This document shows positions 40,590 through 62,922 of a stretch of DNA of 64,000 nucleotides, piece after piece; the stretch's first letter is position 1; each line of letters starts with the position of its first letter. The stretch comes from Macrostomum lignano (lineage: Eukaryota), in NCBI GenBank assembly GCA_002269645.1, contig NIVC01000684.1:372001-436000 (forward strand), given 5' to 3'. Below the pieces are notes generated by a model, which was not told where the DNA came from, did not search any database, and saw only the letters and a program-made list of their open reading frames with translations. Both the position numbers and the translations under genes were made by a program.

Positions 40590-41524
40590 CTAGGCAAGCT
40601 GAATCCGTTCTCCTGACACTATTTTCTTGAGATCGTCCAGCCTCCTCCTGGCGAAGTCGTCCAAGTTGTTGAACCTCTCGAACTCGGACACCGCGGCGTC
40701 GACGGCTGCGACGTCGCGAGCGTCGGTAGCCGAAGCCAGCGACCTCACCAGCGAGAGCTCGTCGGTGTCCTTGAACGAGCCGCACAGCACAGCCAGCTGC
40801 TCCGCCTTCTCGCCGACTCCCGCAGCTCCTGAGCACAGCAGGCACAGACAGCTCTTGGCCAGGTGGTCCTTGGCTCCGAAGCTCAACAGACTGTGCTGCT
40901 CAGCCGACACTCCCAGATCCTCAAACACTGCGGCTGCCTCTGCCAGCCTCCCGCAGTCCGCCATCAACTCTGCGGCCTTGGCGCGGCTGCCCGCAGCGCT
41001 GGCCGGACTGTCCTGGCCGCTCCAGAAGTCCGCCGCTCTCACGTAGACATCGATGGCCTCCTCGACTTGCTGAGATGCAGCCAGCAGGTCTCCAGCCTCC
41101 TCCAGCTGTCTGGCAGCGATGCTGAACTGGCCCTGCTCTGCGTACATCTCGGCCGCTTGCTGCAGGCACCGCACGGCCTTCGGTCTCGTGTCTGGCAGCT
41201 TGCGGTAGCAGTTCGCAGCCTCCGAGTAATTGTTGGCCGCATCGAGCTCGCATCGCCTCTGCCTTGAGAACTGCTCGGCCGCGGCTTCGAATTCCTGCCC
41301 AGCTTCGTGCCAGTTTTTATCGAATTTGTGCTTGTTTCCTTTGTCAAGAAAATGTTCAGATCCTTTGAGCTCTCTGGTGATTAAATATGAAATTACGAGC
41401 CCAGTCGCTGCAGCAGCGAGCAAAGTCGTTTTAACGACTTTGCTTATATTTTTTTTGGAAGTGATCTCATTGTGATCTCCGCGAGTTTGGATGACTGCGG
41501 CAGCTTGGACAATTGAACTGAATT
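40590..41524 (-). CDS. alpha-SNAP-like paralog 1 with predicted TM segment (VVKTTLLAAAATGLVISYLIT); start codon not found
   Basis: Open frame from the acceptor tttgtattttag (41525) to TAG. SNAP core present (NWHEAGQEF, DAANNYSEAANCYRK, GQFSIAAR, LLSFGAKD, LDDF). There is no in-frame ATG before the core, so it needs an upstream exon or is defective. Confidence 0.75.
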
Positions 41525-41799
41525 CTAAAATACAAACAAAAATCGAGTTGAATTTTTAGCTCCAACCTTATTGTTTCCATCTCCAACCTACGGGTAGGAG
41601 CTAATATATATTTAGCTAATTTTAGTCCCGGATACTAGAATAACTGGATATGCCCCTCGCAATTGAAGTAGTAAAAAAGTAGAGCGTCTACTCTTTTTTT
41701 CAGTAGTTTGTCTGCGCAATGTCACTTGTATTGATTGTGGCACCTAAAAATTCCTTCCCCTTCTCCGACTCTACGGCCCCAGAAGATAAAGGTTTAAGA

Positions 41800-42065
41800 A
41801 TAAATGAAGACGGACGAAACTCAATCTAGGGGCAGGCCCAATTTGGGTTAACTAATTAGAGAGCTGTAAGGAGAGAGGTCACAGTCAGACGAACGAAACT
41901 CTGCCTAGGGGGACAGGCTTAACCTGGCTCAGCCAATAAAAGAGCAGTAAGGAGAGAGGTTAAAGTTGAGACTGATGAATCTCAGCCTAAGGGGACAGGC
42001 CCAATCTGCTTCAGCCAATAAAAGAGCCTAGGGGGAGGGCCAGGCTCAATCTAGCTCAGCCAATG
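41800..42065. repeat. Degenerate ~80-bp tandem repeats with CCAAT motifs at the 5' side of the DIRS element
   Basis: About 3.5 units containing ctaggggg.caggc, cagccaat(aaaagagc) and gtaaggagagagg. Confidence 0.7.
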
Positions 42066-42256
42066 ATTTGTACTCCGTGCGTACTCTCTCTCCCCCGTCG
42101 CGCCCCTCCCCCTCCGTCTCTCTGCCCCGCGCGCACCCACCCCCACTCTGTTTTTAAAGGCTGCTCGCGTGTGTTTGTCTCGCTTTGTCTGTTTGCGCGA
42201 GTTGATTTTTCAGAGAGCTCACAGAGCTGGCCGAGGCGGGCTTCACGACCACCAAA

Positions 42257-42557
42257 TTGATGAGATTTGATGAGGCTTACCGCATCAACCAGCACCAGTA
42301 CGGATTTCACTGGGGTACCGAGTCGTTCCAGCTGCTCGCTAAGCATATTCTCGCCCCAGGAGAGACGGAATCTCAGGATAAGAAAGCCGCATCTAAGCAG
42401 CCTCTTCACGGTGCGGCTGATCGACACCAGCTCTGCAATAACTTTAACGCTAACAGGTGCTTCCGTCGCCAGTGCTCTTTCCTTCGTCTGCCGTATCTGT
42501 CGAGGGAACCACCCAGCCTCGGCGCACCCGGAGGATGTTGCCAAGTCAAAAAACTGA
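42257..42557 (+). pseudogene. gag-like remnant with frameshifted Cys/His finger
   Basis: RFDEAYR...HWG followed by CNNFNANRCFRRQCSFL. The finger continues as VCRICRGNHPA in another frame, consistent with a 2-nt deletion near 42484. Confidence 0.7.
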
Positions 42558-42559
42558 AG

Positions 42560-44180
42560 CGCCCGGCGGCCGAGCACCCGCGCGAAGCTCCTCCGGCCGC
42601 CAATCATTTGTACAGTCTTTTAAATCCTAGCGAGCTAGCCGATCTTTCCTTGGATCGTTTCCCTATTCACCGCAACCTCAGCACCTGGCGTCTCGAGCTT
42701 GAATCAGATACAGACCGTGATTTTTTGCTTAACGGAATTGCTAATGGATTTGACGTCACTGACACTTTTGTTTTTACTCCTACCGAGATCTCCAACTATC
42801 AGTCGACCACCTGCCTTGAGAACCGCGAATTGATCGAAGCAGCGATCAAGAAAGAGATTTCAAACGGTCGCTATGTGACTACTTCATTTAAGCCAGCTAT
42901 TGTCAGTCCTCTGTCCTCTGGGTGCCGTTCCTAAGTCGTCTGGGGGCCTGCGCATCATCCACGACGCTAGCGTCCCGGAATGTCATTCCATTAACTCCTA
43001 TCGTACAGCTAAGCAGAAGCTGAAGTTCTCGACCGTCTCGGAGCTCACTCGGATGCTGCGTCCTGGCTGGTACATGGCAAAAGTCGATCTGATGGATGCC
43101 TATCGGTCTTGCCCTATCTCGACCCGCGGCTTCGGCGCCACCGGCATCAAGTGGACATTCAGTGGTGACACCAAGCCGACCTACATTATCGACACCGCGC
43201 TTGGCTTTGGACTCTCAGCTAGCGTTGAAGTTTTTCATCGTCTTTCTCAAGCAGTTAAGCGCATGATGGCTAGGTGCGGCTTCACTCGGTTCTGCAACTA
43301 CCTGGATGACTTCTGCTGCGTTGGGTCTTCACTCGAAGAATGCAATGAGGCCTTCGCTGCCCTTTTGGCGCTCCTGCGAGACCTGGGCCTGGCCATTAAC
43401 TGGAAGAAAGTAGTCAAACCGTGCCAATCCCTCATTTTTCTCGGAATCAAAATTGTCACTTCTCTCGGCACACTGAGTCTCCCGCAGGAGAAACTTCAGG
43501 AGCTCCGGGATATTCTGGACACTCACCTGTCTCACTCTCGTGTTTTTAAGAGACAGCTCCAATGGCTTTGTGGCAAACTTGGCTGGTTTTGCGAGGTTGC
43601 CCGCTCCGGTAGATGCTTACTTCGGGACCTCATCGACTTGTGCAACTCCCTTGCCAAGCCGCACCACAAGCTGAAGATCGATGCCACTGTGCGCTTTGAA
43701 CTGATGTTCTGGCGTAGCGCTACTGACGGGCCCGCAGGCCTCGAGCTGTGGCCGCAGCCCGGCTCTCGTATCGTCGTTGAGACTGACGCTTGTCTTCAAG
43801 GTGGAGCGGCCATCTTCAGCGATGGTGTCTAGCATGATTGGCTCTACATCAATTGGGACCTAGACTGCGACGGCGCCTTCAAGGGCCTTCCCATCAACCA
43901 TTTGGAAGCGATTGTTCCCCTCATCTTCATCGTCCGTTTTCGTGACCAGCTGGCAAACTCGGAGGTGACCTTCTACACCGACAACACCGCCGTCGTCGGT
44001 ATGATCCGGCGCGGTACTTCCGGGTGCCCTGCTATGAGGCGGCTCATGCGGTCGGCAGTGCTGACGGCGCTGCGTCTCAACATCCGGTTCAACATCTTCC
44101 ACGTGCCCGGGCGGTACCAGATCCTGAGTGACCCCGCGTCTAGGCTGCACGATCCCGCTCACCTGATTAACTTTGCGTGC
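42560..44180 (+). pseudogene. Reverse transcriptase / RNase H, disrupted
   Basis: AKVDLMDAYR, LGFGLSAS, NYLDDF, FLGI, TDAC, INHLE, YTDN and HVPG motifs. A 7-bp tandem duplication (tcctctg) at ~42906-42920 shifts IVSPL|GAVPK, and there is an in-frame TAG at 43830-43832. Confidence 0.88.
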
Positions 44181-45189
44181 CGTTTCTACAAAACTTTGCT
44201 CATTGATCCAGTTTCATTTTCCGCTCCGCTCCTCACTCGCTCCCAGCTCGCGGCGCGCAATCTCTTCACAGCTCGCCTCCTGGCTCGCGTTTGCTGCCCA
44301 GCTCGGATTCGACCCTGTCCACGCCACCGACGAGCAGGTTGCCACGTACATCGCGCACCTTTGGCAGCAGCGCCGCCTGCGCTCGTCTCAGAGCTTCCGG
44401 CCATATCTGCACGCTGTCGCGTGGCTGCAGCGCCTCCACGGTGTGCCAGTCTCCGCCCAGAGCTCGCTAGTCCAGGCAACACTGCGGGGAGTTCAGCGCG
44501 ATATCGGCTCGGCGCCGAGGCAGAAGGCCGGTCTGAGCCCCGAGGCTTTGCTACGGCTGCGGCCGCGTATGGAGGTAGGCTCTCCGGTTGGAGCCTCGAT
44601 GTGGTGTTGCTTGCTAGTGGGTTTTTACGGCATGCTTCGTTGCGCCAACCTCTTTGCTCCATCTCTGCGCGGGGCGGGCACGCCGAGTGATTCAGCGGTG
44701 CTGACAAGCGACGTCAGTTTGCAGCGCGACGGTTTCTGGGTCCTCATTCGGCAGAGTAAGACTAATCAATTTCGCTCTAGAGTCCATCGCGTTTGGATCC
44801 CGCGCCTGAAGCCTTCGTCTGGGGCTCGCCTCGATCTATGTCCGTTTGAAGCTCTTCTGCGCCATTTGCAGCTCAACAGCCCCCGCGCCTCGAGTTGTCA
44901 TCCGTTCGCATTTCGCAAAGGTCATGAGTTGCTGCCGCTTACTCGCAATGTCTTCTGCCGGCTGCTCAAGCGAGCTGGCGCGGCAGCCGGGCTCGACCCA
45001 CGCTCGCTTTCGGGGCACTCGTTGCGGCGCGGAGGAGCGACTTCCTTCCTTAAAAGCGGCGCCACCCTCCCAGAGGTGATGCAGATCGGGGACTGGCGTA
45101 GCGAAGCGGTCCACCGGTATGTCCAGCTGCCGGTGGCGGACCTCCAGATGACCGTGCAGCGCGTCAGCCAGCGCTTTGCCTCCGTTTAA
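44173..45189 (+). CDS. Tyrosine recombinase of the DIRS element (open frame, 338 codons)
   Basis: Catalytic set present: FYGMLRCAN (R), QSKT (K), GHSLRRGGAT (HxxR), GDWRS (W) and HRYV (Y). No stops. Confidence 0.9.
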   Translation: MRAVSTKLCSLIQFHFPLRSSLAPSSRRAISSQLASWLAFAAQLGFDPVHATDEQVATYIAHLWQQRRLRSSQSFRPYLHAVAWLQRLHGVPVSAQSSLVQATLRGVQRDIGSAPRQKAGLSPEALLRLRPRMEVGSPVGASMWCCLLVGFYGMLRCANLFAPSLRGAGTPSDSAVLTSDVSLQRDGFWVLIRQSKTNQFRSRVHRVWIPRLKPSSGARLDLCPFEALLRHLQLNSPRASSCHPFAFRKGHELLPLTRNVFCRLLKRAGAAAGLDPRSLSGHSLRRGGATSFLKSGATLPEVMQIGDWRSEAVHRYVQLPVADLQMTVQRVSQRFASV

Positions 45190-45551
45190 CGTTTTTTCCC
45201 CACTATCTTCGTGCGCTTGCCCTCTTCTTGCTTCCTTTGGGCCTTGGGCTCTTTTTGCTCGTCTGCGTGCCTCGTTCTCCCAAGTTCGCGTCTCTCTGCC
45301 TTCATGCTCCGACCGTGGAATTAATAGTTATTCTAGTAACTGATGTTTTTATGTGTATAAGCTGGCAATGACGGTTTGTTGCTCGAAACTACTGTTTGGA
45401 CTCACAATTAGCTTTTGAGCTACTCGATCAAAACATTTTAACGGTAAGTGGCTCGTAAACCGAAGCGTTTAAATCTTATTTAGGCTCATTTAGCTAGCAG
45501 AAACAATTGGAACTCTTTAAATAAAATGTTGGCTATCTAAAGGGTGTAAAA

Positions 45552-45973
45552 CAAGGATTAGCAAACTCCGACCCGCGAGCGACTTTCAGTGTACGATGCC
45601 TCTCTATCCGGCTCTCGGGTCCTTTGAAACTTCACAATAGCAATCCGGCCCGCTTAAGGTCTCTTCTCAACACTCTTACCCTCCGATCCTCTCTCCCCTC
45701 TTCTCTCTTCTCTCCCTTTCATCTCTCCCCATTTTTTTTAACTCTCATTTCTCTTCTTCACTTCTCCTCTCTTCTTTCCTCTTTCCTCTCCCCCCTTATC
45801 TTTTCTCTCATCTCTTCTCTGATCCCATATCTCATATTATCTCTCCTCTTATTTTCACTTTTCTATTCTCTCAGCTCTATTTCCTCCCTTCTCCTCTCTC
45901 ATCTGGCCCGCAGTCATTAGCTAGTAGGCTCTTTTTCTAGCCAGCTCCAGGTAAAAATGTTTGCCGACCCTTG
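45552..45973 (+). mobile_element. CT-interior hAT MITE (copy with TSD)
   Basis: Ends caaggattagcaaactc / tgtttgccgacccttg. Flanks gtgtaaaa and gtttaaaa form an 8-bp TSD with one mismatch. Confidence 0.8.
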
Positions 45974-46430
45974 GTTTAAAAGGTTTTTAGCTTAGCAAAA
46001 AGTCAGTTGTCTTACGAGATGCACGCGTGACAATGCTCCACCGGTGCCAGAGCCATTGCGACAGACCACAGGAAGTTATTAGCGAAATTAAAGCCGAACC
46101 GATCGTTTCTGCAGGTGTTTTACTGTGTGACTGGCCCATCTTATTCAGGTTGAGCATGAATGACAGAAATGTATACATCTCTTAATTTACTGAAAACTGT
46201 AACTTTCTTTGACTTCAGGTTACAATTTCTTGACTGTACTAGGCATACGTTAAGTGCTATAATTTAAGTAAGAATTAATAAAATGTAACTTGGTCAAGAT
46301 TAAAATAAATTTAAGACTAACTTAATTGTTCCAAAATACTAATTACTCCCCCCAGTCAAGTATTAGTCATTTAATAAAGATAACACACAAAGTAGTCGTC
46401 AGCTAAACGACATTTTATACTTATTTACTA

Positions 46431-47187: not shown

Positions 47188-47944
47188 CTAGGCAACCTGA
47201 ATCCGTTCTTCTGACACAATTTTCTTGAGATCCTCCAGTCTCCTCCTGGCGAAGTCGTCCAAGTTGTTGAACCTCTCGAACGCGGACACCGCGGCGTCGA
47301 CGGCTGCGACGTCGCGAGCGTCGGTAGCCGAAGCCAGCGACCTCACCAGCGAGAGCTCGTCGGTGTCCTTGAACGAGCCGCACCGCCCAGCCAGCTGCTC
47401 CGCCTTCTCGCCGACTCCCGCAGCTCCTGAGCACAGCAGGCACAGACAGCTCTTGGCCAGGTGGTCCTTGGCTCCGAAGCTCAACAGACTGTGCTGCTCA
47501 GCCGACACTCCCAGATCCTCAAACACCGCGGCTGCTTCTACCAGCCTCCTCCAGCTGTCTGGCAGCGATGCTGAACTGGCCCTGCTCTGCGTACATCTCG
47601 GCCGCTTGCTGCAGGCAGCGCACGGCCTTCGGTCTCGTGTCTGGCAGCTTGCGGTAGCAGTTCGCAGCCTCCGAGTAATTGTTGGCCGCATCGAGCTCGC
47701 GTCTTCTCTGCTTTGAGAACTGCCCGGCCGCGGCTTCGAATTCCTGCCCAGCTTCATGCCAGTTTTGATGAAGCTTCAGCTGGTTGCCCTGCTGCAGAAG
47801 CTTGGCAGTGTCAGAGGTTCGCTAGGGCTGCGTCCGCACGGGCCTTCAGGTCGCGTCTGACTGTCACTTTCTCCTTTTACTATCAAATCTGTCGTCAGAA
47901 CTTTTCGAAGTGGAGTTAATGCAGCAACACCAACAACAAGGCAT
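47188..47944 (-). pseudogene. alpha-SNAP-like paralog 2, pseudogene; N-terminus MPCCWCCC
   Basis: ATG 47944 lies 8 nt after the acceptor tttttaacag. Three in-frame stops precede the core. A 149-bp frameshifting deletion lies between two ccagcctcc repeats (measured against copy 1, 40943-41100). Confidence 0.88.
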
Positions 47945-49980: not shown

Positions 49981-49981
49981 G

Positions 49982-51148: not shown

Positions 51149-52007
51149 CAGTGATCGGCAGACTTTTACTTCAAAAGCCAGATAAAGAATCCAGCTTATG
51201 TGCGGGCCAGATGAGAGTGGAAAGGAGAAGGAATAGACTATTAGAAGAGAGGAGAGGCGGGACGGGGATAAGAGAAAACATGGAAGATAAGAGAAGAGAC
51301 AAGTGGTGAGGAGAGAGCAGAGAAGAAGGGAGGAAGAAGCGAGAGGAGGGGAGAAAGGAGGGAGAGGAAAGAGTAAAGGTGAGAAGAGGGGAGAGATGAG
51401 ACAGAGGATCGATGAGAGGAGAGTAGAGAAGAGTGAGAAAAGAGTAGAGATGAGAGAGCAGAAAGAAGATGACAGAGGGTCAAGAGGAGAGGAGAGAGTA
51501 GAAAGGATAGAGAAGAGAGAAGATAAGAGGGGGAGAGAAGAGTGAGAAGAGAAGAGATAGAGATAATAGAGATAAGAGAGGGATGTAAGAAGAGGGGAGA
51601 AAGGAGAGATGAGATTGTAGGTAGAGATGAGACAAATGAAAGGAGAGATGAGAGAGTAAAGATAAGAGATGAAAAAGGTGAGAGGAGAGTGCAGAGAGAT
51701 GAGAGAAGATATTAGAGGAGAGAGAGTATAGAAGAGAGGAGTAAGGAAAGAGAGGAGTCAGAAGAGGTGAAAGAGAAGAGTACAGAGGAGATAAGTGAGA
51801 GAACGTATTAGAGAGTAAAGATGACAGATGAGAGAGCAGAGATGAGGGTGAACAGACGAGAGATGGGAGAGTAGAGAGAACAGAGGAGAGATAAGAGAGA
51901 AGAGATTACAGAGACTAGAGGAGAGAGGAGAGACAGGGAGAGAGAAGAGGAAATAGGAGAATGAAGAGGGGAGAGAGTAGAGAGTATAAGAGGGATGGGA
52001 GAGGAGA

Positions 52008-52088
<81 letters not shown>

Positions 52089-52823
52089 GAGAGAGAGCGC
52101 AGAGCAGAGAGAAATGAGAAGAGATAAGAGAGAAAAGATAAAAGAAGAGAAAGGAGAGATAAAAACGCAGACAAGAGAGAAGAGAGGTGAGGGAAGAGAC
52201 GAGTGACGAGGGGAGAGAGAAGAGATAAAACAAGAAAAGAGATGAGAGGAAAGAGAGAGAGGAAAGAGGTGAAAGAAGAGACGAGAGAAGAGGGGAGAGA
52301 GGAGAGAGAGAGGAAAGAGGAGAGAGGAGAGAGGAGAGAGTTAAGAGAAGAGAGAAAAGAATAGAGAGGAGAAGGAAGAGACGAGAGAAGAGGGGGAGAG
52401 AGGAGAGAGAAGAAGAGAGAAAACGAAAAAGTAGAGAGGAGAGAGGAGAGGAGAGAGAAAAGAAAAGGGAAGAGATGAGATAAGATAAGAGATATGAAAG
52501 AGAAGAGAGATGAGGGAAGATACGAAAGAAGATAGGAGAGAGGAGAGGAGAGAGAAAACGAAAGAGTAGAGAGGAAGAGGAGAGGAGAGAGAAAACGAAA
52601 AGTAGAGAGGAGACAGGAGAGAGGAGAGAAGAGAGAAGAGACAAGAGATAAGAGAGATGAAAGAGAAGAGAGATGAGGGAAGATATGAGAGAAGAGAGGA
52701 GAGAAGAGAGAGGAGAGACGAGGGACGAGAGAGAAGAGAGGAAACAGAAGAGACGATAGAAATTTTAAAGGATCCAAGGGACATAGGGAGAGTCAGGGAG
52801 AGGCCAGAGTTTGCCAATACATG
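51149..52823 (-). mobile_element. CT-interior hAT MITE, long reverse copy (~1.5 kb AG-rich interior)
   Basis: Degenerate TIRs cagtgatcggcagact (51149) and gagtttgccaatacatg (52823). Subterminal tgcgggccagatgagag at 51201-51217 and aaattttaaaggatccaaggg are present. Confidence 0.72.
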
Positions 52824-53267: not shown

Positions 53268-54206
53268 TTAAGCCAGCTGAATTATCTCTCTGGCTGCGAT
53301 TTTCCTCAGCTGGTGCAGTCTCCTCCTGGCGAAGTCGTCCAAGTTGTTGAACCTCTTGAACGCGGACACCGCGGCGTCGACGGCTGCGACGTCGCGAGCG
53401 TCGGTAGCCGAAGCCAGCGACCTCACCAGCGAGAGCTCGTCGGTGTCCTTGAACGAGCCGCACAGCTCAGCCAGCTGCTCCGCCTTCTCGCCGACTCCCG
53501 CAGCTCCTGAGCACAGCAGGCACAGACAGCTCTTGGCCAGGTGGTCCTTGGCTCCGAAGCTCAACAGACTGTGCTGCTCAGCCGACACTCCCAGATCCTC
53601 AAACACCGCGGCTGCATCTGCCAGCCTCCCGCAGTCCGCCATCAACTCCGCGGCCTTGGCGCGGCTGCCCGCAGCGTTGGCCGGACTGTCCTCGCCGCTC
53701 CAGAAGTCCGCCGCTCTCACGTAGGCACCGATGGCCTTCTCGACTTGCTGAGATGCAGCCAGCAGGTCTCCAGCCTCCTCCAGCTGTCTGGCAGCGATGC
53801 TGAACTGGCCCTGCTCTGCGTACATCTCGGCCGCTTGCTGCAGGCACCGCACGGCCTTCGGTCTCGTGTTTGGCAGCTTGCGGTAGCAGTTCGCAGCCTC
53901 CGAGTAATTGTTGGCCGCATCGAGCTCGCGTCGCCTCTGCTTTGAGAACTGCTCGGCCGCGGCTTCAAATGCCCGCCCAGCTTCGCGCCAGTTTTGATGA
54001 AGCTTCAGCTGGTTGCCCTGCTGCACTAGCTGTTCAGAATTGACTTCAAAATTTGTAGAGAACCAACGCGGTGTCCAATGCGCAGAGTCACTCAGCTGCT
54101 GATACAGTTGTTCCCTCTGTTGTCGACAGCAACAGTAGTAAAGGATAGCGGCGAAAATTGCAATGATTACCAGAATGAATGAGAATAACGTAAAAAAGTC
54201 AGGCAT
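53268..54206 (-). CDS. alpha-SNAP-like paralog 3 (312 aa) with N-terminal signal-anchor and juxtamembrane CCC
   Basis: MPDFFTLFSFILVIIAIFAAILYYCCCRQQR followed by an intact SNAP core. An acceptor cgcgtgcag lies 46 nt upstream of the ATG. Confidence 0.9.
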   Translation of the reverse strand: MPDFFTLFSFILVIIAIFAAILYYCCCRQQREQLYQQLSDSAHWTPRWFSTNFEVNSEQLVQQGNQLKLHQNWREAGRAFEAAAEQFSKQRRRELDAANNYSEAANCYRKLPNTRPKAVRCLQQAAEMYAEQGQFSIAARQLEEAGDLLAASQQVEKAIGAYVRAADFWSGEDSPANAAGSRAKAAELMADCGRLADAAAVFEDLGVSAEQHSLLSFGAKDHLAKSCLCLLCSGAAGVGEKAEQLAELCGSFKDTDELSLVRSLASATDARDVAAVDAAVSAFKRFNNLDDFARRRLHQLRKIAAREIIQLA

Positions 54207-56014: not shown

Positions 56015-57082
56015 CTACTGCAGCTGCACCCCGCCAGAAGCCACAAACTGCCTCAGCTGGTGCAGTCTCCTCCTGGCGAAGTCGTCCAAGTTGTTGAACT
56101 TCTCGAACTCGGACACCGCGGCGTCGACGGCTGCGACGTCGCGAGCGTCGGTAGCCGAAGCCAGCGACCTCACCAGCGAGAGCTCGTCGGTGTCCTTGAA
56201 CGAGCCGCACCGCCCAGCCAGCTGCTCCGCCTTCTCGCCGACTCCCGCAGCTCCTGAGCACAGCAGGCACAGACAGCTCTTGGCCAGCTGGTCCTTGGCT
56301 CCGAAGCTCAACAGACTGTGCTGCTCAGCCGACACTCCCAGATCCTCAAACTCCCGGGCTGCCTCTGCCAGCCTCCCGCAGTCCGCCATCAACTCCGCGG
56401 CCTTGGCGCGGCTGCCCGCAGCGCTGGCCGGACTGTCCTGGCCGCTCCAGAAGTCCGCCGCTCTCACGTAGACATCGATCGCTTTTCTTTGTTCTTGAGA
56501 TGCAGCCAGCAGGTCTCCAGCCTCCTCCAGCTGTCTGGCAGCGATGCGGAACTGGCCCTGCTCTGCGTACATCTCGGCCGCTTGCTGCAGGCACCGCACG
56601 GCCTTCGGTCTCGTGTCTGGCAGCTTGCGGTAGCAGTTCGCAGCCTCTGAGTAATTGTTGGCCGCATCGAGCTCGCATCGCCTCTGCTTTGAGAACTGCT
56701 CGGCCGCGGCTTCGAATGCCTGTCCAGCTTCGTGCCAGTTTTGATGAAGCTTCAGCTGGTTGCCCTGCTGCAGAAGCTTGGCGGTGTCAGAGGTTCGCTG
56801 TAGGGCCGGCTGGGGCTGCGTCAGCCTGCTTGTTTCTTCATCATCTATAGGAAAGCAACACAGACAAACGCCTATGGGTAACGTTAAATCTTCAGGTGAC
56901 GTCATCCTGCTGGCTTCTTCATCTCTAGGAAAGCAACACGGACAAATGCAGCTCCAGCAGCTGTAGCAGCAGCCTTCAGGTGACGTTGTGCTGGTCTCTT
57001 TATCTCTAGGAAAACAACACGGAAAAATGCAGCTCCAGCAGCTGCAGCAAATTTTGCGAATGCAACTGCAGATGTTTCCCAT
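56015..57082 (-). CDS. alpha-SNAP-like paralog 4 (355 aa) with MG(N) myristoylation-type start and 18-Cys string
   Basis: Acceptor ttttctacttgcag|gtaATG GGA AAC, three tandem Cys-rich units, then an intact SNAP core. Confidence 0.9.
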   Translation of the reverse strand: MGNICSCIRKICCSCWSCIFPCCFPRDKETSTTSPEGCCYSCWSCICPCCFPRDEEASRMTSPEDLTLPIGVCLCCFPIDDEETSRLTQPQPALQRTSDTAKLLQQGNQLKLHQNWHEAGQAFEAAAEQFSKQRRCELDAANNYSEAANCYRKLPDTRPKAVRCLQQAAEMYAEQGQFRIAARQLEEAGDLLAASQEQRKAIDVYVRAADFWSGQDSPASAAGSRAKAAELMADCGRLAEAAREFEDLGVSAEQHSLLSFGAKDQLAKSCLCLLCSGAAGVGEKAEQLAGRCGSFKDTDELSLVRSLASATDARDVAAVDAAVSEFEKFNNLDDFARRRLHQLRQFVASGGVQLQ

Positions 57083-57344
57083 TACCTGCAAGTAGAAAAC
57101 AGTCTTTCATATGTAATTTTTTGTGTGTCTGCTTTTGCCGCTTTAAGTTTTCAGCTAATTCGTGCAAGGTGGGAAATGCATGAAATATTGTTGGGTATCT
57201 ATCAGTACAGCTTCAGCAACTGGCCTACTCAGTTACTACAATAAAAAAACAGTAAAAAGATGGGATCACAAATAAGTAGTTGATAATATAAATAATAATA
57301 TTTTATTTTTTGACTTGGATCTGCATTTTACTATAGAGGAATTT

Positions 57345-57525: not shown

Positions 57526-58109
57526 ACATGACTATTCTATTTCCTACATTGATTGTGCAATTTTCCAGTGAATTTGTGTTTTTTATAGACTAGCAAAAAA
57601 GTTTTTAAATAGGTCTATATCGCGTGCAGACAGACGGATTTTATTAACGTTGGTTTTGCGCAAAGCAAAGATCTTTTGACGGTGGAAAATTTAACATACA
57701 GGTTAAACCAGTAAAGAATTTAATGAATTTGAAAAAAGCAGATCATAATTGACGAAATAGGCAAATAAATGAAAACTGAAACCAAAATGTTGCTACCTAC
57801 AATAATAGCGGTTAAAAAAGAGAAAACTCAGTCAATGAAATCATACCAGCAGTAAAGGAAAATTGCAGTAAATTTTGGCGCCAGAGCAAACATTTAGTTA
57901 TTACTGAATAAATATGCGCAGAAACTATAACTAATTCGGATATGTTTAACGTAAAATAAAATAAAAGCTATCGTTAAAATTGACCTACTTTAAAAAGCTT
58001 GTACAGGGACTTCTAAAAATATTACCAGGTGGACTGGAAGCTGGAAATAATGCTACGCCTTTAACGAAATCCTCTCACAACCAGCGCTGAGACAATTCTG
58101 CGCACTCCG

Positions 58110-58340
58110 CTGACTCCTCAGCACACACAAGCGCGCCGATACGCTGTGTACGCAGGCACGGCACTCATGCACACGCTCACACAGGGTGTACAGCGGTCCT
58201 GGCTATCTAATCGGTCAGGCATGTGCACTCTGTGCCTTGGGGGTTGGCCCTCATGGCTGTGAATCTCACGACAGCCTCCATTTTCGTGCACACAAGCCCC
58301 AAATGAATGTGTTTGCGTACTCAATCGAACTAGGGGTCGT
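58110..58340 (-). mobile_element. Partial SINE (family 2-related central domain)
   Basis: cacagggtgtacagcgg and gtgccttgggggttggccctca are shared with 60837-61205. Confidence 0.65.
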
Positions 58341-59529
58341 GGGCGTTTATTACCGCTGAGCAGCTCCGCCTCAACACCTTCACTTGGGGATCAAAGGACT
58401 CACTTGGTCTAGCCAAATCCAAAACACTGCTTGGGGCGGTAATTTTCAGATATAAGAAATAACAGTAGCCACCACATTGGCGTCAACATGGAGCCGCGTT
58501 GCCTTCTAGCTTCCAGTTCAACTCTCTGCTGCTACTTCCAGAAGTCCTTGGCTAGTAAATGATTTGAAAAGCAAGCCATACAAATGGATAGAGCGCCATA
58601 TTAGACAGACCATGTAAACAGTAACTAGAGAAGACACTGGGACTAAAAGCAAATTTTAAGACGCAAGAAAAACAAAAGTACCGGCTGTTAAATAGTAAAG
58701 CATTGCTAAATTGACACAGATTGATTATTTTCCTGTTTGATAATAATCTATTTTTGCTAGTTCTCTAATCCAAGTGTCTAGATGTCCATGTTCAAGTCAA
58801 TTTGCACTTTTTTCTGTTCTCACGCCCTATTTTTTTCCTACGCGGGTGTCCGCTGGTGGTAAAAACGATGGTGGTAGGGGCAGAGAGGAGAGAGATAAGC
58901 GTTGAGTTAAGAACCGCGGCAGCCAATCAGAATGGAGCGAGGAGAGAGACTAAAATATATGTCTACACAAGGAGAGAGAGAATTTGAGTGTTCCTGCACT
59001 AAAGCAGTTCAAGCCAAACAGACTGAAATAGAAAGTCAGCAAAAAATAAACAAACAAACTTTATACTCGGGTGTTGTGTTGGTTAATCTAAGATTGGGGC
59101 GACTAACAAATTCCAGATTAGCATAATAAACTTTGCAATAGAAATTGGACTCATAACTTTGCGAAAAATACCGTTTCGAGGAAAATGAAATAAACAATTA
59201 CATGAAAAAATTACATTGCACAAAACATATGTTGGTAAATTCAAACCACCGTATAATTCAAATGATAAAAAGATTTTGTCGACAGCAACATATGGAAGAA
59301 GATTCCTACAATTTCCACGAAGTTGGCATTATTGCTGAGCCTTGTACTTCGCAGATTTATAAACCAGTAGAATACTTATAATAAACTACAACAGCAGAAT
59401 CATACAATAGAAAGCTGGAGATTTCTCGCCTTATCATCATTATGGCTTTGGCATGCAAACTTAAACCTCCAAGACATAGTAGGATTGAGTCGAGTCCAAT
59501 GCCGAATATATTAATACTCAGGCTGCTAC

Positions 59530-60609
59530 TTACAGTAACTGCACACTGTCACCAGTAGCTAAAAACTGTCTCAGCTGGTCCAGCCTCCTCCTGGCGAAGT
59601 CGTCCAAGTTGTTGAACCTCTCGAACTCGGACACCGCGGCGTCGACGGCTGCGACGTCGCGAGCGTCGGTAGCCGAAGCCAGCGACCTCACCAGCGAGAG
59701 CTCGTCGGTGTCCTTGAACGAGCCGCACAGCACAGCCAGCTGCTCCGCCTTCTCGCCGACTCCCGCAGCTCCTGAGCACAGCAGGCACAGACAGCTCTTG
59801 GCCAGGTGGTCCTTGGCTCCGAAGCTCAACAGACTGTGCTGCTCAGCCGACACTCCCAGATCCTCAAACACTGCGGCTGCCTCTGCCAGCCTCCCGCAGT
59901 CCGCCATCAACTCTGCGGCCTTGGCGCGGCTGCCCGCAGCGCTGGCCGGACTGTCCTGGCCGCTCCAGAAGTCCGCCGCTCTCACGTAGACATCGATGGC
60001 CTCCTCGACTTGCTGAGATGCAGCCAGCAGGTCTCCAGCCTCCTCCAGCTGTCTGGCAGCGATGCTGAACTGGCCCTGCTCTGCGTACATCTCGGCCGCT
60101 TGCTGCAGGCACCGCACGGCCTTCAGTCTCGTGTCTGGCAGCTTGCGGTAGCAGTTCGCAGCCTCCGAGTAATTGTTGGCCGCATCGAGCTCGCGATGCT
60201 TCGAGAAGCGATCTGCAACAGTCTCAAACTTTTTGCCAGCTTCAAGCCAGTTTTTATCATGTTTGTTCCTGTTGCCATCGTCGATTAATCGCTGCTGCGA
60301 TCCGTGCGTTTGACGCTTTCTAAACAACAGAAAGTACAGTACCAGCAGTAGCAATACTACCAAGATGCACAGAAACCCGACAAAGATATAGGCTGTATGT
60401 AATTTCGCTGGTGGCACAGTTGGCTGAGCTGTTGGAGCTGATGTAGTCGTGTCGATAGTAGTTGTGTTTAAATAAGACGGATTTGACGTCGTTAGGACAC
60501 TCGTCGTTGGTCCGGTCGTACTGTTGGCATCAGCAGCAGCGGCACTTTCCACTGCTGCCATTGCGGTACTATTTGAACTTTTGATTTCGCTGCTATTCGA
60601 AGTCTCCAT
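59530..60609 (-). CDS. alpha-SNAP-like paralog 5 (359 aa) with S/T-rich N-terminal segment and TM helix
   Basis: Acceptor ccttttttcag at 60669; first ATG at 60609 (METSNSS). Sequons NSS/NST/NST/NTT, TM AYIFVGFLCILVVLLLLVLYFLLF followed by RKR, then an intact core. Confidence 0.9.
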   Translation of the reverse strand: METSNSSEIKSSNSTAMAAVESAAAADANSTTGPTTSVLTTSNPSYLNTTTIDTTTSAPTAQPTVPPAKLHTAYIFVGFLCILVVLLLLVLYFLLFRKRQTHGSQQRLIDDGNRNKHDKNWLEAGKKFETVADRFSKHRELDAANNYSEAANCYRKLPDTRLKAVRCLQQAAEMYAEQGQFSIAARQLEEAGDLLAASQQVEEAIDVYVRAADFWSGQDSPASAAGSRAKAAELMADCGRLAEAAAVFEDLGVSAEQHSLLSFGAKDHLAKSCLCLLCSGAAGVGEKAEQLAVLCGSFKDTDELSLVRSLASATDARDVAAVDAAVSEFERFNNLDDFARRRLDQLRQFLATGDSVQLL

Positions 60610-60836
60610 TCTTGATTCTTGCGAGTTATTAAACAGATGTTCTTTAGTATGCTTTGGGTGAAAATGCACTGAAAAAAGGGGTGAATAGTGATATTGAAAA
60701 TAGCGTTAAAATGAAGTTGGAACATAAAGATATTATCTGTTCCTAAGCTCTTTAAACATGGAACGGGAACATAGTTCTTGGTTTCTTTGATCAACACTGG
60801 CAGCTTGTAGGAAGTGAGGCAGACGTTACGTTAAGG

Positions 60837-61205
60837 TTTTAGAGGCATAGGGCTGTGTGCACCCTGGCGCACTTTAAGCGACATTGTCACACAACCGGCG
60901 AGAGGCATTACTGCCCCCATTCCGCCGACTCCCCTGAGCAGGTGCACAAGCGCGGGGATACGTACGCAGTCATACGCACAGGCACACACTCACAGGAGTG
61001 TACAGCGGCCCTAACTTTGTTTATCGTTAGGCATGTACACTTCACTGTGCCTTGGGGGTTGGCCCTCAAGCTGGGCGTTAATTGCACGAGCAGAGCCAAG
61101 CCGAGGTTCCAATTTAGCTCCAATATTAATGTGACTGCACTTGGAATCGAGCCTGGGCCGCTGGCACACCAGAGCGCCGCGCTGGACCACTGGGCTACGT
61201 CTCCC
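60837..61205 (-). mobile_element. tRNA-derived SINE family 2, full-length copy
   Basis: The - strand 5' end reads gggagacgtagcccagtgg (A box)...ggctcgattcc (B box). Colinear with 35034-35375. Confidence 0.85.
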
Positions 61206-61899
61206 AACCAATTGCGTAAATTTTTCTGGCGAAAATTCAAACCTGCAGATATGTTTTGCAACTTAGATGAAACGAGCACAGTATATCGAGGCATTTAAAC
61301 AACTTTTGGGTCAACTTTTGAATGTAGAAGATTAGAACAACAGTTTCTTTTTTAAACTATTAATTTCTACAACGATTGAGACAATTCTTTGCGTACGGCT
61401 AAAATGAAAAAACCGACAAATTTTTAGCTAGGAAGCAAGCAATCTAAGAAATAGCACAGTAATTAGCTACATGGCAACGATCGATGCTAGTTTTCTTTGT
61501 CGGGCTCAAGACGGAATAGGCATGATGCGGCACTTAAATTTCACAGCAGCATCATAACCAGCTACAGCTTAAAATGATTCAATAATGCAAGCAGACTGAA
61601 AAAATATGCAAGTGAAATTACGTACCTTTTGAATTCTGGAGACAAAACAAGCAAGCTACCGAAATATTACAATGCTATACAACTCGTAAGGATAATGTTT
61701 ACAGCTTTCTACTAATTCGGTCTTATATAAGTAACGCCACTAATTAAATATAGAGTAAAAAATCACTGGCATAAAATTGACGGTCTATAACAAACAAGGA
61801 TATTAGAACCTACGGTACCTTGAAATAACTATTCAACTTTCGTATGCACACTAAAATGTGTTTCTCAATAAAATTTGAATCGCACAAAACCCTTTCCAA

Positions 61900-62922
61900 C
61901 TACTGCAGCTGCACCCCTCCAGTAGCCACAAACTGCCTCAGCTGGTGCAGCCTCCTCCTGGCGAAGTCGTCCAAGTTGTTGAACCTCTCGAACTCGGCCA
62001 CCGCGGCGTCGACGGCTGCGACGTCGCGAGCGTCGGTACCCGAAGCCAGTGACCTCACCAGCGAGAGCTCGTCGGTGTCCTTGAACGAGCCGCACCGCCC
62101 AGCCAGCTGCTCCGCCTTCTCGCCGACTCCCGCAGCTCCTGAGCACAGCAGGCACAGACAGCTCTTGGCCAGGTGGTCCTTGGCTCCGAAGCTCAACAGA
62201 CTGTGCTGCTCAGCCGACACTCCCAGATCCTCAAACACCGCGGCTGCCTCTGCCAGCCTCCCGCAGTCCGCCATCAACTCCGCGGCCTTGGCGCGGCTGC
62301 CCGCAGCGCTGGCCGGACTGTCCTCGCCGCTCCAGAAGTCCGCCGCTCTCAAGTAGGCATCGATGGCCTCCTCGACTTGCTGAGATGCAGCCAGCAGGTC
62401 TCCAGCCTCCTCCAGCTGTCTGGCAGCGATGCTGAACTGGCCCTGCTCTGCGTACATCTTGGCCGCTTGCTGCAGGCACCGCACGGCCTTCGGTCTCGTG
62501 TCTGGCAGCTTGCGGTAGCAGTTCGCAGCCTCCGAGTAATTGTTGGCCGCATCGAGCTCGCATCGTCTCTGCTTTGAGAACTGCTCGGCCGCGGCTTCGA
62601 ATGCCTGTCCAGCTTCGCTCCAAGTTTTATCGGCTTTGTGTTTGATTCCTTTGGCAACCAAGTTCTCCGCTGTTTCTCCTGTTGCAATTTTCTTGACTTG
62701 ATATAGAAGCCAAAGCATCAATGATGATAGCAGCACTGCTAACCACCATGAGCAAACAACCGAAATTTCATCAGTAGTTGTCGTAGCCCGATGATGTTCT
62801 AGTTCAGTATAGTTGCAGCTCTTTGTTAGATTAGAACTGCCTGATGAAGTATAACGGTAGTAGAGCTGTATGTATATGTGAACACAACTTGCGCTGGAGT
62901 TCTGTAGACGTCCAATTTTCAT
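61900..62922 (-). CDS. alpha-SNAP-like paralog 6 (340 aa) with short N-terminal segment and TM helix
   Basis: Acceptor gtctcacag|ctATG. Sequons NSS/NLT/NYT, TM ISVVCSWWLAVLLSSLMLWLLY followed by QVKK, then an intact core. Confidence 0.88.
   Translation of the reverse strand: MKIGRLQNSSASCVHIYIQLYYRYTSSGSSNLTKSCNYTELEHHRATTTTDEISVVCSWWLAVLLSSLMLWLLYQVKKIATGETAENLVAKGIKHKADKTWSEAGQAFEAAAEQFSKQRRCELDAANNYSEAANCYRKLPDTRPKAVRCLQQAAKMYAEQGQFSIAARQLEEAGDLLAASQQVEEAIDAYLRAADFWSGEDSPASAAGSRAKAAELMADCGRLAEAAAVFEDLGVSAEQHSLLSFGAKDHLAKSCLCLLCSGAAGVGEKAEQLAGRCGSFKDTDELSLVRSLASGTDARDVAAVDAAVAEFERFNNLDDFARRRLHQLRQFVATGGVQLQ

What the first reader, a model, noticed from the sequence alone, without database searches (positions are those of the whole stretch)
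40590..62922. Tandem array of membrane-anchored alpha-SNAP-like proteins, each with a different anchor
Seen: six co-oriented paralogs share a ~200-aa SNAP core (ELDAANN...ARRRL). Homology to alpha-SNAP starts only near the 'AANMFKMAKNW' helix, and upstream every copy has an unrelated extension: TM helices in copies 1, 3, 5 and 6 (mostly followed by basic residues, with NxS/T-bearing N-terminal segments in 5 and 6) or Cys strings in copies 2 and 4. Known: alpha-SNAP/Sec17 is soluble, binds membranes through an N-terminal hydrophobic loop in exactly the replaced region, and couples SNAREs to NSF. Inference: the transient loop was swapped repeatedly for permanent anchors, giving a variable-outside/conserved-inside, receptor-like family. 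It could target SNARE disassembly, or its inhibition, to particular secretory membranes. I know of no described animal family like this, but cannot rule one out without a search.
Basis: partly seen in the sequence, partly recalled or inferred. Interest (0 to 1): 0.92.

Follow-up and report, generated by a model that had tools for sequence, protein, structure and literature searches.

The report
Membrane-anchored alpha-SNAP paralog array in a flatworm
The flatworm Macrostomum lignano carries a tandem family of genes copied from the vesicle-fusion cofactor alpha-SNAP, in which the part that normally dips into membranes is replaced by a different permanent membrane anchor in each copy and the residues that couple to the NSF ATPase are lost; this looks like an undescribed, locally tethered regulator of membrane fusion, but its function is untested.

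Summary
The window (Macrostomum lignano, GenBank contig NIVC01000684.1) has six co-oriented alpha-SNAP-derived genes at 40.6-62.9 kb. Five are intact. Copy 2 is a pseudogene. Copy 1 is a two-exon gene with a DIRS-like retroelement in its intron. The array extends past the window (at least 9 members) and recurs on two other contigs.

Each intact copy has a SNAP core (Pfam E 1e-46 to 1e-52; AlphaFold/Foldseek best match alpha-SNAP/Sec17) that lacks helix 1 and the membrane loop. In their place sit unrelated N-termini:
- a TM helix plus CCC;
- glycosylation-site-rich segments plus a TM helix;
- MG-start plus Cys strings.

Central cores are 94-98% identical while flanks cannot be aligned, so gene conversion homogenises the cores. 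The N-termini are older, and copy 3's is under purifying selection.

The family replaces four residues invariant in 49 canonical animal SNAPs (R116Q, K163G, R239D, D217G) and has lost the acidic NSF-binding tail. It keeps L197, L198, Y200F, K203 and the penultimate Leu. I therefore favour a membrane-resident SNARE binder uncoupled from NSF over a tethered disassembly adaptor.

No close relative was found among 1.84 billion representative proteins, and no paper mentions these genes. Expression evidence is indirect and function is untested.

Verdict: new variant of a known kind; interest 0.6.

The parts
40590..41524 (-). c1 exon 2: weakly hydrophobic segment, helix alpha2, SNAP core and stop
   Evidence: Pfam SNAP E 5.9e-50. 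The acceptor ttttag lies at 41525-41530. The spliced product reproduces the junction TRAS|QFSS of GenBank PAA91313.1.
41525..46015 (-). c1 intron, carrying a DIRS-like retroelement (ORFs 42257-45189, + strand)
   Evidence: Donor GTAAGA at 46015. RT PF00078 E 5e-9 and tyrosine recombinase PF00589 E 7e-7. The same intron is about 1.3 kb in the paralogous locus L002.
46016..46139 (-). c1 exon 1: MGQSHSKTPAETIGSALISLITSCGLSQWLWHRWSIVTRAS (N-myristoylation-type start)
   Evidence: tblastn of the P0002 N-terminus, 72% identity, E 2e-15; sequence. The spliced ORF is 352 aa.
47188..47944 (-). c2: pseudogene of the Cys-rich type (MPCCWCCC...)
   Evidence: Stop after 26 codons, further in-frame stops, two reading frames and loss of core residues ~146-180. 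Pfam matches only profile positions 161-279. Its 5' homology is longest with c4.
53268..54206 (-). c3: 312 aa, N-terminal TM helix followed by CCC, linker, SNAP core
   Evidence: Pfam E 7.2e-52; KD 2.95. AF2 pLDDT 92.5, helix 2-40, disordered 42-56, then the SNAP fold. Foldseek best matches are alpha-SNAP and Sec17.
56015..57082 (-). c4: 355 aa, MGNICSC start, three Cys-string repeats (18 Cys), SNAP core
   Evidence: Pfam E 4.2e-48; sequence and Cys count. An acceptor TTGCAG lies 3 nt upstream of the ATG and matches the SL trans-splice motif YTNCAG.
59530..60609 (-). c5: 359 aa, S/T-rich N-terminus with 4 NxS/T sites, strong TM, RKR, SNAP core
   Evidence: Pfam E 1.3e-46; KD 3.26; NxS/T sites at 5, 13, 29 and 48, all before the TM. 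An acceptor TTTCAG lies 59 nt upstream. In the paralogous locus the annotated partial CDS starts 2 nt after it.
61900..62922 (-). c6: 340 aa, N-terminus with 3 NxS/T sites, TM, KK, SNAP core
   Evidence: Pfam E 5.4e-49; KD 2.12; N-terminal features. Its counterpart PAA91315.1 (P0003) is a transcript-derived, unspliced CDS.
40621..41320 (-). Homogenised (gene-converted) core tract of c1. Equivalent tracts: 53299-53998, 56060-56745, 59578-60282, 61945-62657
   Evidence: Self-blastn gives 94-97.8% identity over ~700 bp, with homology ending abruptly on both sides. Core GC3 is 0.76-0.79 against 0.37-0.54 in the N-termini.

Best explanation
This is a lineage-specific tandem family (so far seen only in Macrostomum lignano) of alpha-SNAP-derived genes.

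Shown:
- Each intact member is a 240-residue SNAP-fold module beginning at helix alpha2. It is joined by a short linker to a copy-specific N-terminal membrane-anchoring segment.
- The anchors are of three kinds: a signal-anchor TM followed by a CCC cluster; a glycosylation-site-rich stretch plus TM plus basic residues; or an MG-start with Cys strings.
- The cores evolve in concert by gene conversion. The N-termini and the last ~15 residues diverge.
- The family lacks helix alpha1 and the hydrophobic loop, and has replaced invariant SNARE- and NSF-contact residues.

Inferred:
- Topology is N-out/C-in, so the SNAP module sits in the cytosol. It would be held against one particular membrane in the same orientation that the loop gives soluble alpha-SNAP.
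- The module keeps the hydrophobic SNARE-groove contacts (L197, L198, Y200F), K122R, K167, K203 and the penultimate Leu. It has lost R116, K163, R239, D217 and the acidic tail.
- It therefore most likely still docks on SNARE bundles or a related helical bundle, but recruits or activates NSF poorly.
- On this reading the family acts as compartment-addressed SNARE-complex binders that compete with soluble alpha-SNAP. They would be local brakes or protectors rather than disassembly adaptors, with the different anchors sending the same module to different membranes.
- Origin: probably one 5'-truncated, intronless copy of NAPA that acquired an anchor. Tandem duplication and N-terminal turnover followed, partly by recruiting AT-rich flanking DNA.
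For: Identity and fold:
- Pfam SNAP E 1e-46 to 1e-52.
- PDB alpha-SNAP 1e-29, Sec17 1e-15, gamma-SNAP 7e-5.
- AF2 pLDDT 92.5 with an N-terminal helix, a disordered linker and 13 SNAP helices. Foldseek best matches are alpha-SNAP and Sec17 in 20S complexes, TM-score 0.7-0.8.

Anchors:
- Hydropathy, NxS/T placement and charge.
- N-termini mutually unrelated.

Real coding sequence:
- The c3 N-terminus compared with its counterpart in the second locus has dS 0.80 and dN/dS 0.40 (Fisher p 0.006). Indels are in-frame, and the TM and CCC are kept.
- The last 20 codons have pS 0.475 and pN 0.25.
- The divergent paralog (~40% identity) has the same TM plus truncated-SNAP build. Its core has dN/dS 0.55.
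- The c7 and divergent-paralog N-termini are homologous (E 8e-6).

Concerted evolution:
- Cores are 94-98% identical and flanks cannot be aligned.
- Core dS between loci is 0.06 against 0.80 for the c3 N-terminus.
- C-terminal tail types are shuffled among copies.

Transcription (indirect):
- GenBank models of this assembly derive from RNA-seq transcripts. They include the N-termini and the c1-type intron.

Loss of coupling residues:
- R116Q, K163G, R239D, D217G and D293Q, against 49/49, 49/49, 49/49, 49/49 and 46/49 in canonical SNAPs.
- R116A leaves 2% of disassembly activity.

Precedents:
- An N-terminal TM on Sec17 is functional and bypasses the loop.
- Tandemly repeated soybean Rhg1 alpha-SNAPs with atypical C-termini impair NSF function.
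Against: - No direct expression, localisation or binding data exist for any copy. Exact-sequence look-ups of c3 and c6 found no transcript contigs.
- Recent variation in the homogenised central core is close to neutral. The pN/pS ratio is 0.90, and among 13 cores there are 40 aa-variable codons against 11 that vary only synonymously.
- N-terminal GC3 (0.37-0.54) is like intergenic DNA.
- Two of about nine members in this haplotype are pseudogenes, and copy number differs between contigs.
- The penultimate Leu is kept even in the divergent paralog. It is needed for NSF stimulation in canonical SNAPs, which argues that some NSF link may persist.
- Contact-residue reasoning comes from mammalian and yeast complexes. 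M. lignano SNAREs and NSF were not examined.
- Hydropathy is a crude TM predictor. Myristoylation of c1 and c4 depends on which AUG is used. c1 has an in-frame upstream ATG, and the spliced-leader AUG would be in frame at c4.
Confidence: 0.45

Rival explanations
1. Tethered canonical adaptors. The proteins are fully working alpha-SNAPs fixed to particular membranes. They recruit NSF and speed SNARE disassembly there.
For: - TM-Sec17 works and replaces the need for the apolar loop.
- L197, L198, Y200F, K122R, K203 and the penultimate Leu are retained. The C-terminal length matches alpha-SNAP exactly.
- The TM sits at about the loop's distance from the NW motif.
Against: - R116 (R116A gives 2% disassembly), K163, R239 and D217 are invariant in 49 canonical SNAPs. 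D293 is present in 46 of 49. All are replaced, and the acidic tail is gone.
- Identity to any canonical SNAP is only 26-33%, whereas canonical SNAPs share about 50% across phyla.
Confidence: 0.15
2. Neofunctionalised scaffold. The SNAP fold has been reused for a partner other than SNAREs and NSF, as in HAP40. The anchors simply place a TPR-like binding module on membranes.
For: - Several invariant SNARE and NSF contacts are lost.
- HAP40, a SNAP-fold protein that binds huntingtin, is the next structural neighbour after the SNAPs.
- Divergence from canonical SNAPs is high.
Against: - The residues that insert into the SNARE groove (L197, L198, Y200F) and K203 are kept in all members.
- L197, L198 and F200 are kept even in the 40%-identity paralog.
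- The penultimate Leu is conserved across the family.
Confidence: 0.2
3. Decaying or non-functional array. Truncated NAPA copies are amplified in a repeat-rich, partly polyploid genome. Their reading frames stay open by gene conversion, and the N-terminal ORFs are fortuitous T-rich flank sequence that merely looks hydrophobic.
For: - The central core pN/pS ratio is 0.90, with 40 aa-variable against 11 syn-only codons.
- Core dN/dS between loci averages about 0.9 (summed).
- N-terminal GC3 is near the intergenic GC.
- Pseudogenes c2 and P0004, fragmented copies in L004 and copy-number differences.
- Invariant residues are lost.
Against: - 13 or more intact cores on three contigs.
- ORF extensions of 71-119 codons beginning at ATG are improbable by chance, at 1e-2 to 4e-4 each.
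- The c3 N-terminus has dN/dS 0.40 (p 0.006) with the TM and CCC preserved across 44% amino-acid change.
- The tails have ratio 0.53. The old divergent paralog keeps the architecture, with core dN/dS 0.55.
- Transcript-derived annotation exists.
- All NxS/T sites in c5, c6 and c9 fall on the predicted outside.
Confidence: 0.15

Closest known systems
Canonical alpha/beta-SNAP (NAPA/NAPB, yeast Sec17)
   Same: Same Pfam family and fold, and alpha-type rather than gamma-type. The family retains L197, L198, Y200(F), K122(R), K167, K203, the penultimate Leu and the same C-terminal length.
   Different: - No helix alpha1 and no F27/F28 membrane loop; permanent anchors instead.
- R116Q, K163G, R239D, D217G, D293Q and no acidic tail.
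- 26-33% identity, against about 50% among canonical animal SNAPs.
- Intronless core, arranged in a tandem array and evolving in concert.
Engineered TM-Sec17 (Vti1 TM fused to the Sec17 N-terminus; Song et al. 2017, PMC5540461)
   Same: An N-terminal TM anchor on a SNAP module. The construct is active, and the anchor substitutes for the apolar loop's membrane-binding role.
   Different: It is artificial and keeps the full Sec17, including the loop, K159/K163 and the Sec18-activating C-terminus. The flatworm proteins are natural, truncated and altered at those sites.
Soybean Rhg1 resistance-type alpha-SNAPs
   Same: A tandemly repeated locus encoding alpha-SNAP variants with atypical C-termini. 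These are impaired in promoting NSF function and act by interference. One haplotype even has a retrotransposon in an intron.
   Different: - The Rhg1 proteins are soluble and full-length, and differ from wild type at only a few C-terminal residues.
- The whole 31-kb block is repeated.
- They have no new N-termini and no TM anchors.
Multiple alpha-SNAP paralogs of protists (e.g. Leishmania, PMC12019078)
   Same: Lineage-specific duplication of alpha-SNAP, with some charge changes on the SNARE face such as K163 to E in one paralog.
   Different: Those paralogs keep the membrane-interacting loop and the functional C-terminal Leu, and they are soluble.
HAP40 (F8A), a SNAP-fold protein bound to huntingtin
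   Same: It shows that the SNAP fold can be redeployed away from SNARE and NSF work. It is the structural neighbour ranked just below the SNAPs.
   Different: There is no sequence-level relationship here, no membrane anchor and a different partner. That HAP40 derives from SNAP is my own recollection of the literature and was not checked here.
Type III membrane proteins and Cys-string or palmitoylated vesicle proteins (synaptotagmin-like topology, CSP, SNAP-25)
   Same: - A short glycosylated N-terminus without a signal peptide, a TM and a juxtamembrane Cys cluster (c3, c5, c6).
- Cys strings as lipid anchors (c4). These resemblances come from my own knowledge.
   Different: There is no homology; only the anchoring logic is shared. 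Lipidation was not tested.

Membership tests
SNAP family (Pfam PF14938; alpha/beta/gamma-SNAP, Sec17) | Sequence match to the SNAP profile above the curated threshold | tested here: met
   160-177 bits against a cut-off of 25 for c1 and c3-c6; 58.5 bits for pseudogene c2.
SNAP family (Pfam PF14938; alpha/beta/gamma-SNAP, Sec17) | All-helical twisted TPR-like sheet plus a C-terminal helical bundle | tested here: met
   AF2 model of c3 has pLDDT 92.5. Foldseek best matches are alpha-SNAP and Sec17 chains of 20S complexes, TM-score 0.7-0.8. This is a prediction, not a solved structure.
Canonical alpha-SNAP/Sec17 (functional NSF adaptor) | N-terminal helix alpha1 and hydrophobic membrane loop (F27/F28) | tested here: not met
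   Homology starts at helix alpha2. The loop columns are gaps or unrelated residues in the family, against F or L in 48/49 (position 27) and 46/49 (position 28) canonical SNAPs.
Canonical alpha-SNAP/Sec17 (functional NSF adaptor) | Conserved SNARE-contact residues R116, K122, K163, L197, L198, Y200, K203, R239 | tested here: inconclusive
   Kept: K122R, L197, L198, Y200F, K203. Replaced: R116Q, K163G, R239D, each invariant in 49/49 canonical sequences.
Canonical alpha-SNAP/Sec17 (functional NSF adaptor) | Acidic NSF-N-domain contact patches (D217, E249, E252, E253; D290-D293) | tested here: not met
   The family has G, S, D and A at the first set, and at most one acidic residue in the tail with Q at D293.
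Canonical alpha-SNAP/Sec17 (functional NSF adaptor) | Penultimate C-terminal Leu (L294) that stimulates NSF | tested here: met
   Leu in all members, including the divergent paralog. Its role is cited.
Canonical alpha-SNAP/Sec17 (functional NSF adaptor) | Soluble protein that binds SNARE complexes and recruits NSF (biochemical definition) | not testable with these tools
   The sequence predicts membrane anchoring. Binding and ATPase stimulation need experiments.
Type III (N-out, signal-anchor) membrane proteins | No cleavable signal peptide, one TM, positive-inside flank, glycosylation sites only on the N-terminal side | tested here: met
   For c5 and c6 (and c9), KD is 2.1-3.3, RKR, KK or +2 follows the TM, and all NxS/T sites precede it. 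Only hydropathy was used; no dedicated topology predictor was available.
N-myristoylated / S-palmitoylated peripheral proteins | MG-x-x-x-S/T/C start; clustered Cys | tested here: inconclusive
   c1 starts MGQSHSK and c4 starts MGNICSC with 18 Cys. The motif is recalled from PROSITE PS00008. Start-codon choice is uncertain, and the modification itself cannot be tested here.
Processed retrogene of NAPA | Intronless relative of an intron-containing parent, 5' truncation, poly(A) remnant or target-site duplications | not tested
   The core is intronless in all copies and truncated at the same point. The parental M. lignano NAPA was not retrieved, and no poly(A) or target-site duplication search was made.

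The most novel reading that the evidence does not exclude
Macrostomum has evolved a set of natural, compartment-addressed, interfering alpha-SNAPs. One gene-converted cytosolic SNAP module docks on SNARE bundles but cannot drive NSF. It is delivered to different secretory or plasma membranes by interchangeable anchors, some recruited de novo from T-rich flanking DNA. There it locally shields SNARE complexes from disassembly or blocks fusion. This would be a genetically encoded, spatial layer of control over SNARE recycling with no described counterpart in animals.
Probability: 0.25. Interest if true: 0.8.

Novelty: new variant of a known kind. Interest (0 to 1): 0.6.

Why it matters
Alpha-SNAP is a single-copy, soluble, highly conserved housekeeping factor in most animals. 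Its transient membrane loop and its NSF-activating C-terminus are central to current models of SNARE recycling and of Sec17-assisted fusion.

A natural family that hard-wires the membrane contact while removing the NSF and part of the SNARE contacts amounts to an evolutionary separation-of-function experiment. It could show what a membrane-fixed, NSF-uncoupled SNAP does in vivo, and M. lignano has working transgenesis to test this.

The locus is also a clean example of domain-restricted gene conversion: a homogenised core next to fast-turnover, partly flank-derived N-terminal anchors.

If the genes prove to be drifting copies, the lesson is smaller: truncated paralogs in this redundant genome readily gain hydrophobic N-terminal ORFs.

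Tried and rejected
1. Spliced-leader AUG as the start of c1 exon 2. The frame does not match. The real start is an upstream exon.
2. Mobile-element-borne SNAP cassette. Rejected, because copies occur only in this array and its duplicate contigs.
3. Assembly artefact. Rejected, because three contigs show the same gene order, with colinear intergenic DNA at 93-99.6% identity.
4. Direct transcript evidence. Exact-sequence look-ups of c3 and c6 found nothing, and c3-c6 are not in the protein collection. The annotated PAA78524.1 is a chimera of c6, c4 and c1.
5. The host's canonical NAPA, wanted for a tree. A search seeded with a tapeworm alpha-SNAP did not list a M. lignano protein among the 120 shown, so no tree with the host NAPA/NAPG was made.
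6. Literature. Nothing on Macrostomum plus SNAP, on the gene identifiers, or in two supplement files. A general search for membrane-anchored SNAP paralogs gave nothing relevant. The Zhao 2015 paper was not held, so its residue lists are quoted through a review.
7. Other N-terminally extended SNAP hits (P0005, P0016, P0022, P0036, P0073, P0098, P0106, P0149 and others). These proved to be full-length SNAPs with extra sequence or fused gene models, not TM plus truncated SNAP.
8. The third homolog search and the second structure job were not used. The exhaustive HMMER search already showed a gap from 1e-139 to 5e-30.

Full report
**What is there**

The window is Macrostomum lignano DNA. The only close protein matches are BOX15_Mlig proteins. 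Locus L003 from GenBank contig NIVC01000684.1 overlaps the right end of the window, and the c4, c5 and c6 translations are identical.

A tblastn search with one copy finds six SNAP cores. All are on the minus strand, between 40.6 and 62.9 kb, and none lies elsewhere in the window.

Pfam places the five intact copies in the SNAP family at E 1e-46 to 1e-52, covering profile positions ~15-42 to 272-278 of 282. Solved-structure sequences rank as follows:
- alpha-SNAP: E 1e-29
- Sec17: E 1e-15
- gamma-SNAP: E 7e-5

An AlphaFold model of c3 has mean pLDDT 92.5. It shows an N-terminal helix (residues 2-40), a disordered linker (42-56) and 13 helices. Foldseek matches these best to alpha-SNAP and Sec17 chains of 20S complexes, with TM-scores of 0.7-0.8.

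**Gene models**

Under eukaryotic ATG rules the copies are:

| Copy | Coordinates (minus strand) | Product | N-terminal features |
|---|---|---|---|
| c3 | 53268-54206 | 312 aa | MPDFFTLFSFILVIIAIFAAILYYCCCR... |
| c4 | 56015-57082 | 355 aa | MGNICSC..., three Cys-string repeats, 18 Cys |
| c5 | 59530-60609 | 359 aa | four NxS/T sites, strong TM, RKR |
| c6 | 61900-62922 | 340 aa | three NxS/T sites, TM, KK |

c2 (47188-47944) is a pseudogene. It reads MPCCWCCC... and stops after 26 codons. More stops follow, there is a frameshift, and about 35 core residues are missing.

c1 has no ATG in its long ORF. Its first exon lies 4.5 kb upstream (46139-46016, MGQSHSK...). It joins a ttttag acceptor at 41524 through a GTAAGA donor. 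The resulting junction is the same as in the transcript-derived GenBank protein PAA91313.1. A DIRS-like retroelement (RT plus tyrosine recombinase) sits in that intron. The same intron is only about 1.3 kb in the duplicate locus.

**The family is larger than the window shows**

Past the window end, L003 holds three more members:
- a further pseudogene (P0004, with an in-frame stop);
- a divergent paralog (~40% identity), with a long N-terminus carrying two or three hydrophobic segments and ADDQTTK-type repeats;
- another TM-bearing copy, c9.

A second contig (NIVC01000090.1; L001/L002) has the same gene order and ends at a calpain gene, as the window does. It is colinear with the window at 93-98% identity, intergenic DNA included.

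A third contig (L004) is 99.6% identical over 6.9 kb. It carries extra c9-type and divergent-type copies, some of them fragmented.

The published description of this assembly reports large duplicated blocks, which it attributes to extra large chromosomes in the sequenced line.

**How the array evolves**

Between paralogs, DNA identity is 94-97.8% over about 700 bp of core. It stops abruptly near the NW-EAG motif at the 5' end, and about 10-15 codons before the stop at the 3' end. Introns, UTRs and intergenic DNA cannot be aligned.

Between the two loci, the c3 core has dS 0.06 while its N-terminus has dS 0.80. For c1 the values are 0.012 and 0.34. C-terminal tail types are shuffled among copies. 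For example, the third-contig c9-type protein annotated as P0285 carries a c4-type tail.

Core GC3 is 0.76-0.79. N-terminal GC3 is 0.37-0.54, close to the intergenic GC of 0.37-0.41.

Together these results indicate gene conversion confined to the core. I infer that it is GC-biased. The N-termini are older than the homogenised cores. Their intergenic-like composition suggests that some were recruited from flanking DNA.

The N-termini of c7 and of the divergent paralog are homologous (E 8e-6). A TM-anchored state therefore predates the current homogenisation.

**Are the anchors real coding sequence?**

In favour:
- Open extensions of 71-119 codons starting at ATG are improbable in 40% GC DNA, at p about 1e-2 to 4e-4 each (my arithmetic).
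- The c3 N-terminus has dN/dS 0.40 (Fisher p 0.006). Indels are in-frame, and the TM and CCC cluster are preserved despite 44% amino-acid change.
- All NxS/T sites of c5, c6 and c9 lie on the predicted outside, and basic residues follow the TMs.
- Acceptor-like sites lie 2-59 nt upstream of the ATGs. Those of c4, c5 and c7 fit the published SL trans-splice motif YTNCAG.
- The GenBank annotation of this assembly was built from RNA-seq transcripts. Its models include the N-termini of the c6-type, c7-type and c9-type genes and the spliced c1-type gene.

Against:
- Exact look-ups found no independent transcript contigs.
- One annotated protein is a chimera across near-identical cores.
- Recent variation in the homogenised central core is near neutral. 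The pN/pS ratio is 0.90, with 40 aa-variable codons against 11 that vary only synonymously among 13 cores.

Regions that escape homogenisation do show constraint. The last 20 codons have ratio 0.53, the first 14 have 0.50, and the divergent-paralog core has 0.55.

**What the core can and cannot do**

I aligned seven family members with 49 canonical animal alpha/beta-SNAPs.

| Position in alpha-SNAP | Canonical SNAPs | Family |
|---|---|---|
| R116 | R in 49/49 | Q |
| K163 | K in 49/49 | G |
| R239 | R in 49/49 | D |
| D217 | D in 49/49 | G |
| D293 | D in 46/49 | Q |
| E249 / E253 | mostly acidic | S / A |
| K122 | K in 47/49 | R (kept as basic) |
| K167, L197, L198, K203 | conserved | unchanged |
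| Y200 | Y in 48/49 | F |
| L294 (penultimate) | L or I | L |

The divergent paralog shares the R116Q change and the penultimate Leu.

Published work gives the roles of these residues:
- R116A leaves 2% of SNARE disassembly activity, and L197A leaves 5%.
- K122, K163, K203 and R239 contact the SNARE bundle.
- D217, E249, E252, E253 and D290-D293 contact the NSF N-domain.
- The penultimate Leu is needed to stimulate NSF.

The hydrophobic groove contacts therefore survive. The electrostatic SNARE clamp is about half lost, and the NSF docking patches are largely lost.

In c1, c5 and c6 the hydrophobic segment ends 18-23 residues before the NW motif. In alpha-SNAP the membrane loop lies about 25 residues before it. 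An engineered N-terminal TM on Sec17 is active and bypasses the loop's membrane-binding role.

**Mechanism**

The shown and inferred steps are set out in the Best explanation section. In short, I favour a cytosolic SNAP-fold module fixed to a particular membrane in the normal SNAP orientation, still able to dock on SNARE-like bundles but poorly coupled to NSF. It would act as a local competitor of soluble alpha-SNAP.

The soybean Rhg1 locus is the nearest natural precedent. There, tandemly repeated alpha-SNAP variants with atypical C-termini impair NSF function.

Three rivals remain open:
- a fully active tethered adaptor;
- a scaffold redeployed to another partner, as in HAP40, the next structural neighbour;
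- a drifting, non-functional array.

**Novelty**

An exhaustive HMMER search of 1.84 billion representative proteins found only the M. lignano clusters at about 1e-139. The next hits, at 5e-30 and 31-33% identity, are ordinary alpha-SNAPs of tapeworms, acanthocephalans, nematodes and protists.

Among 286 SNAP proteins collected, only the M. lignano ones combine an N-terminal hydrophobic segment with a truncated SNAP domain. A Rhododendron gene model has a TM-like stretch but keeps helix alpha1.

No paper in the library mentions these genes. Other Macrostomum species may not be represented in the protein library, so the family's age is unknown.

I rate this a new variant of a known kind, with interest 0.6. 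The architecture is solid and unusual. The function is unproven.

Noticed in passing
window 42027-45189 (+ strand ORFs 42257-42934, 42900-43832, 43902-44690, 44173-45189): A DIRS-like retroelement (reverse transcriptase PF00078, tyrosine recombinase PF00589) is inserted antisense in the intron of c1. It is absent from the same intron in the duplicate locus L002, where the intron is about 1.3 kb.
   Followed up: partly
window 1-6222: A 6.2-kb satellite of a 16-bp unit (CTGTGTCTGCTTCTCA, about 400 copies) with extreme strand asymmetry (AT skew -0.7). It produces long spurious ORFs in several frames.
   Followed up: no
window 9450-10832, 11191-12567, 12859-13291, 14487-15013, 22156-22747, 23370-24135: A run of further tandem-repeat arrays (units of 21, 10, 14, 55, 174 and 33 bp) fills much of 9-24 kb.
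   Followed up: no
window 32481-35896 (+): Calpain gene exons (Peptidase_C2 and Calpain_III domains) flank the c1 end of the array. A calpain sits at the same place in the duplicate locus L002, so the two arrays are syntenic.
   Followed up: partly
window 26035-28419 (+): A 794-aa ATG-initiated ORF in a GC-rich (57%) stretch has no Pfam match. It could be an unknown gene or a mobile-element protein.
   Followed up: no
window 37650-38347 and 51214-52800: Pyrimidine/purine-rich low-complexity arrays (14-bp unit TCTGCTCTCTCCCC; a GA-rich 7-mer) are similar to each other at about 70%. They produce long Ser/Leu-rich pseudo-ORFs between array members.
   Followed up: no
L003 11680-20558 (GenBank PAA78524.1, P0286): The annotated 340-aa protein is a chimera: c6 N-terminus, a c4-specific middle (EQRKAIDVYV) and the c1 tail (DDLKKIVSGERIQLA). 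Most likely a transcript mis-join across near-identical cores. Other long multi-copy gene models in L001 and L004 look similar.
   Followed up: partly
L001 18912-19979: The c3 counterpart in the duplicate locus carries an in-frame tandem duplication of about 38 residues inside the SNAP core (ARQ..DSPASA repeated).
   Followed up: no
L003 6615-8282; L001 5342-7117; L004 7378-8255, 14899-15704, 20682-21497: A divergent family member (~40% identity to the cores) has a multi-hydrophobic N-terminus, an acidic/Thr repeat region that differs between loci, and a 26-residue insertion in the core. It is not separately annotated. Several copies in L004 are fragmented.
   Followed up: partly
window 57083-57091 and 46140-46160: Start-codon ambiguities. 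If c4 is SL trans-spliced at the TTGCAG acceptor, the AUG that ends the spliced leader would be in frame (MVMGN...). c1 has an in-frame ATG 18 nt upstream of MGQ. Either would remove the Gly-2 needed for myristoylation.
   Followed up: partly
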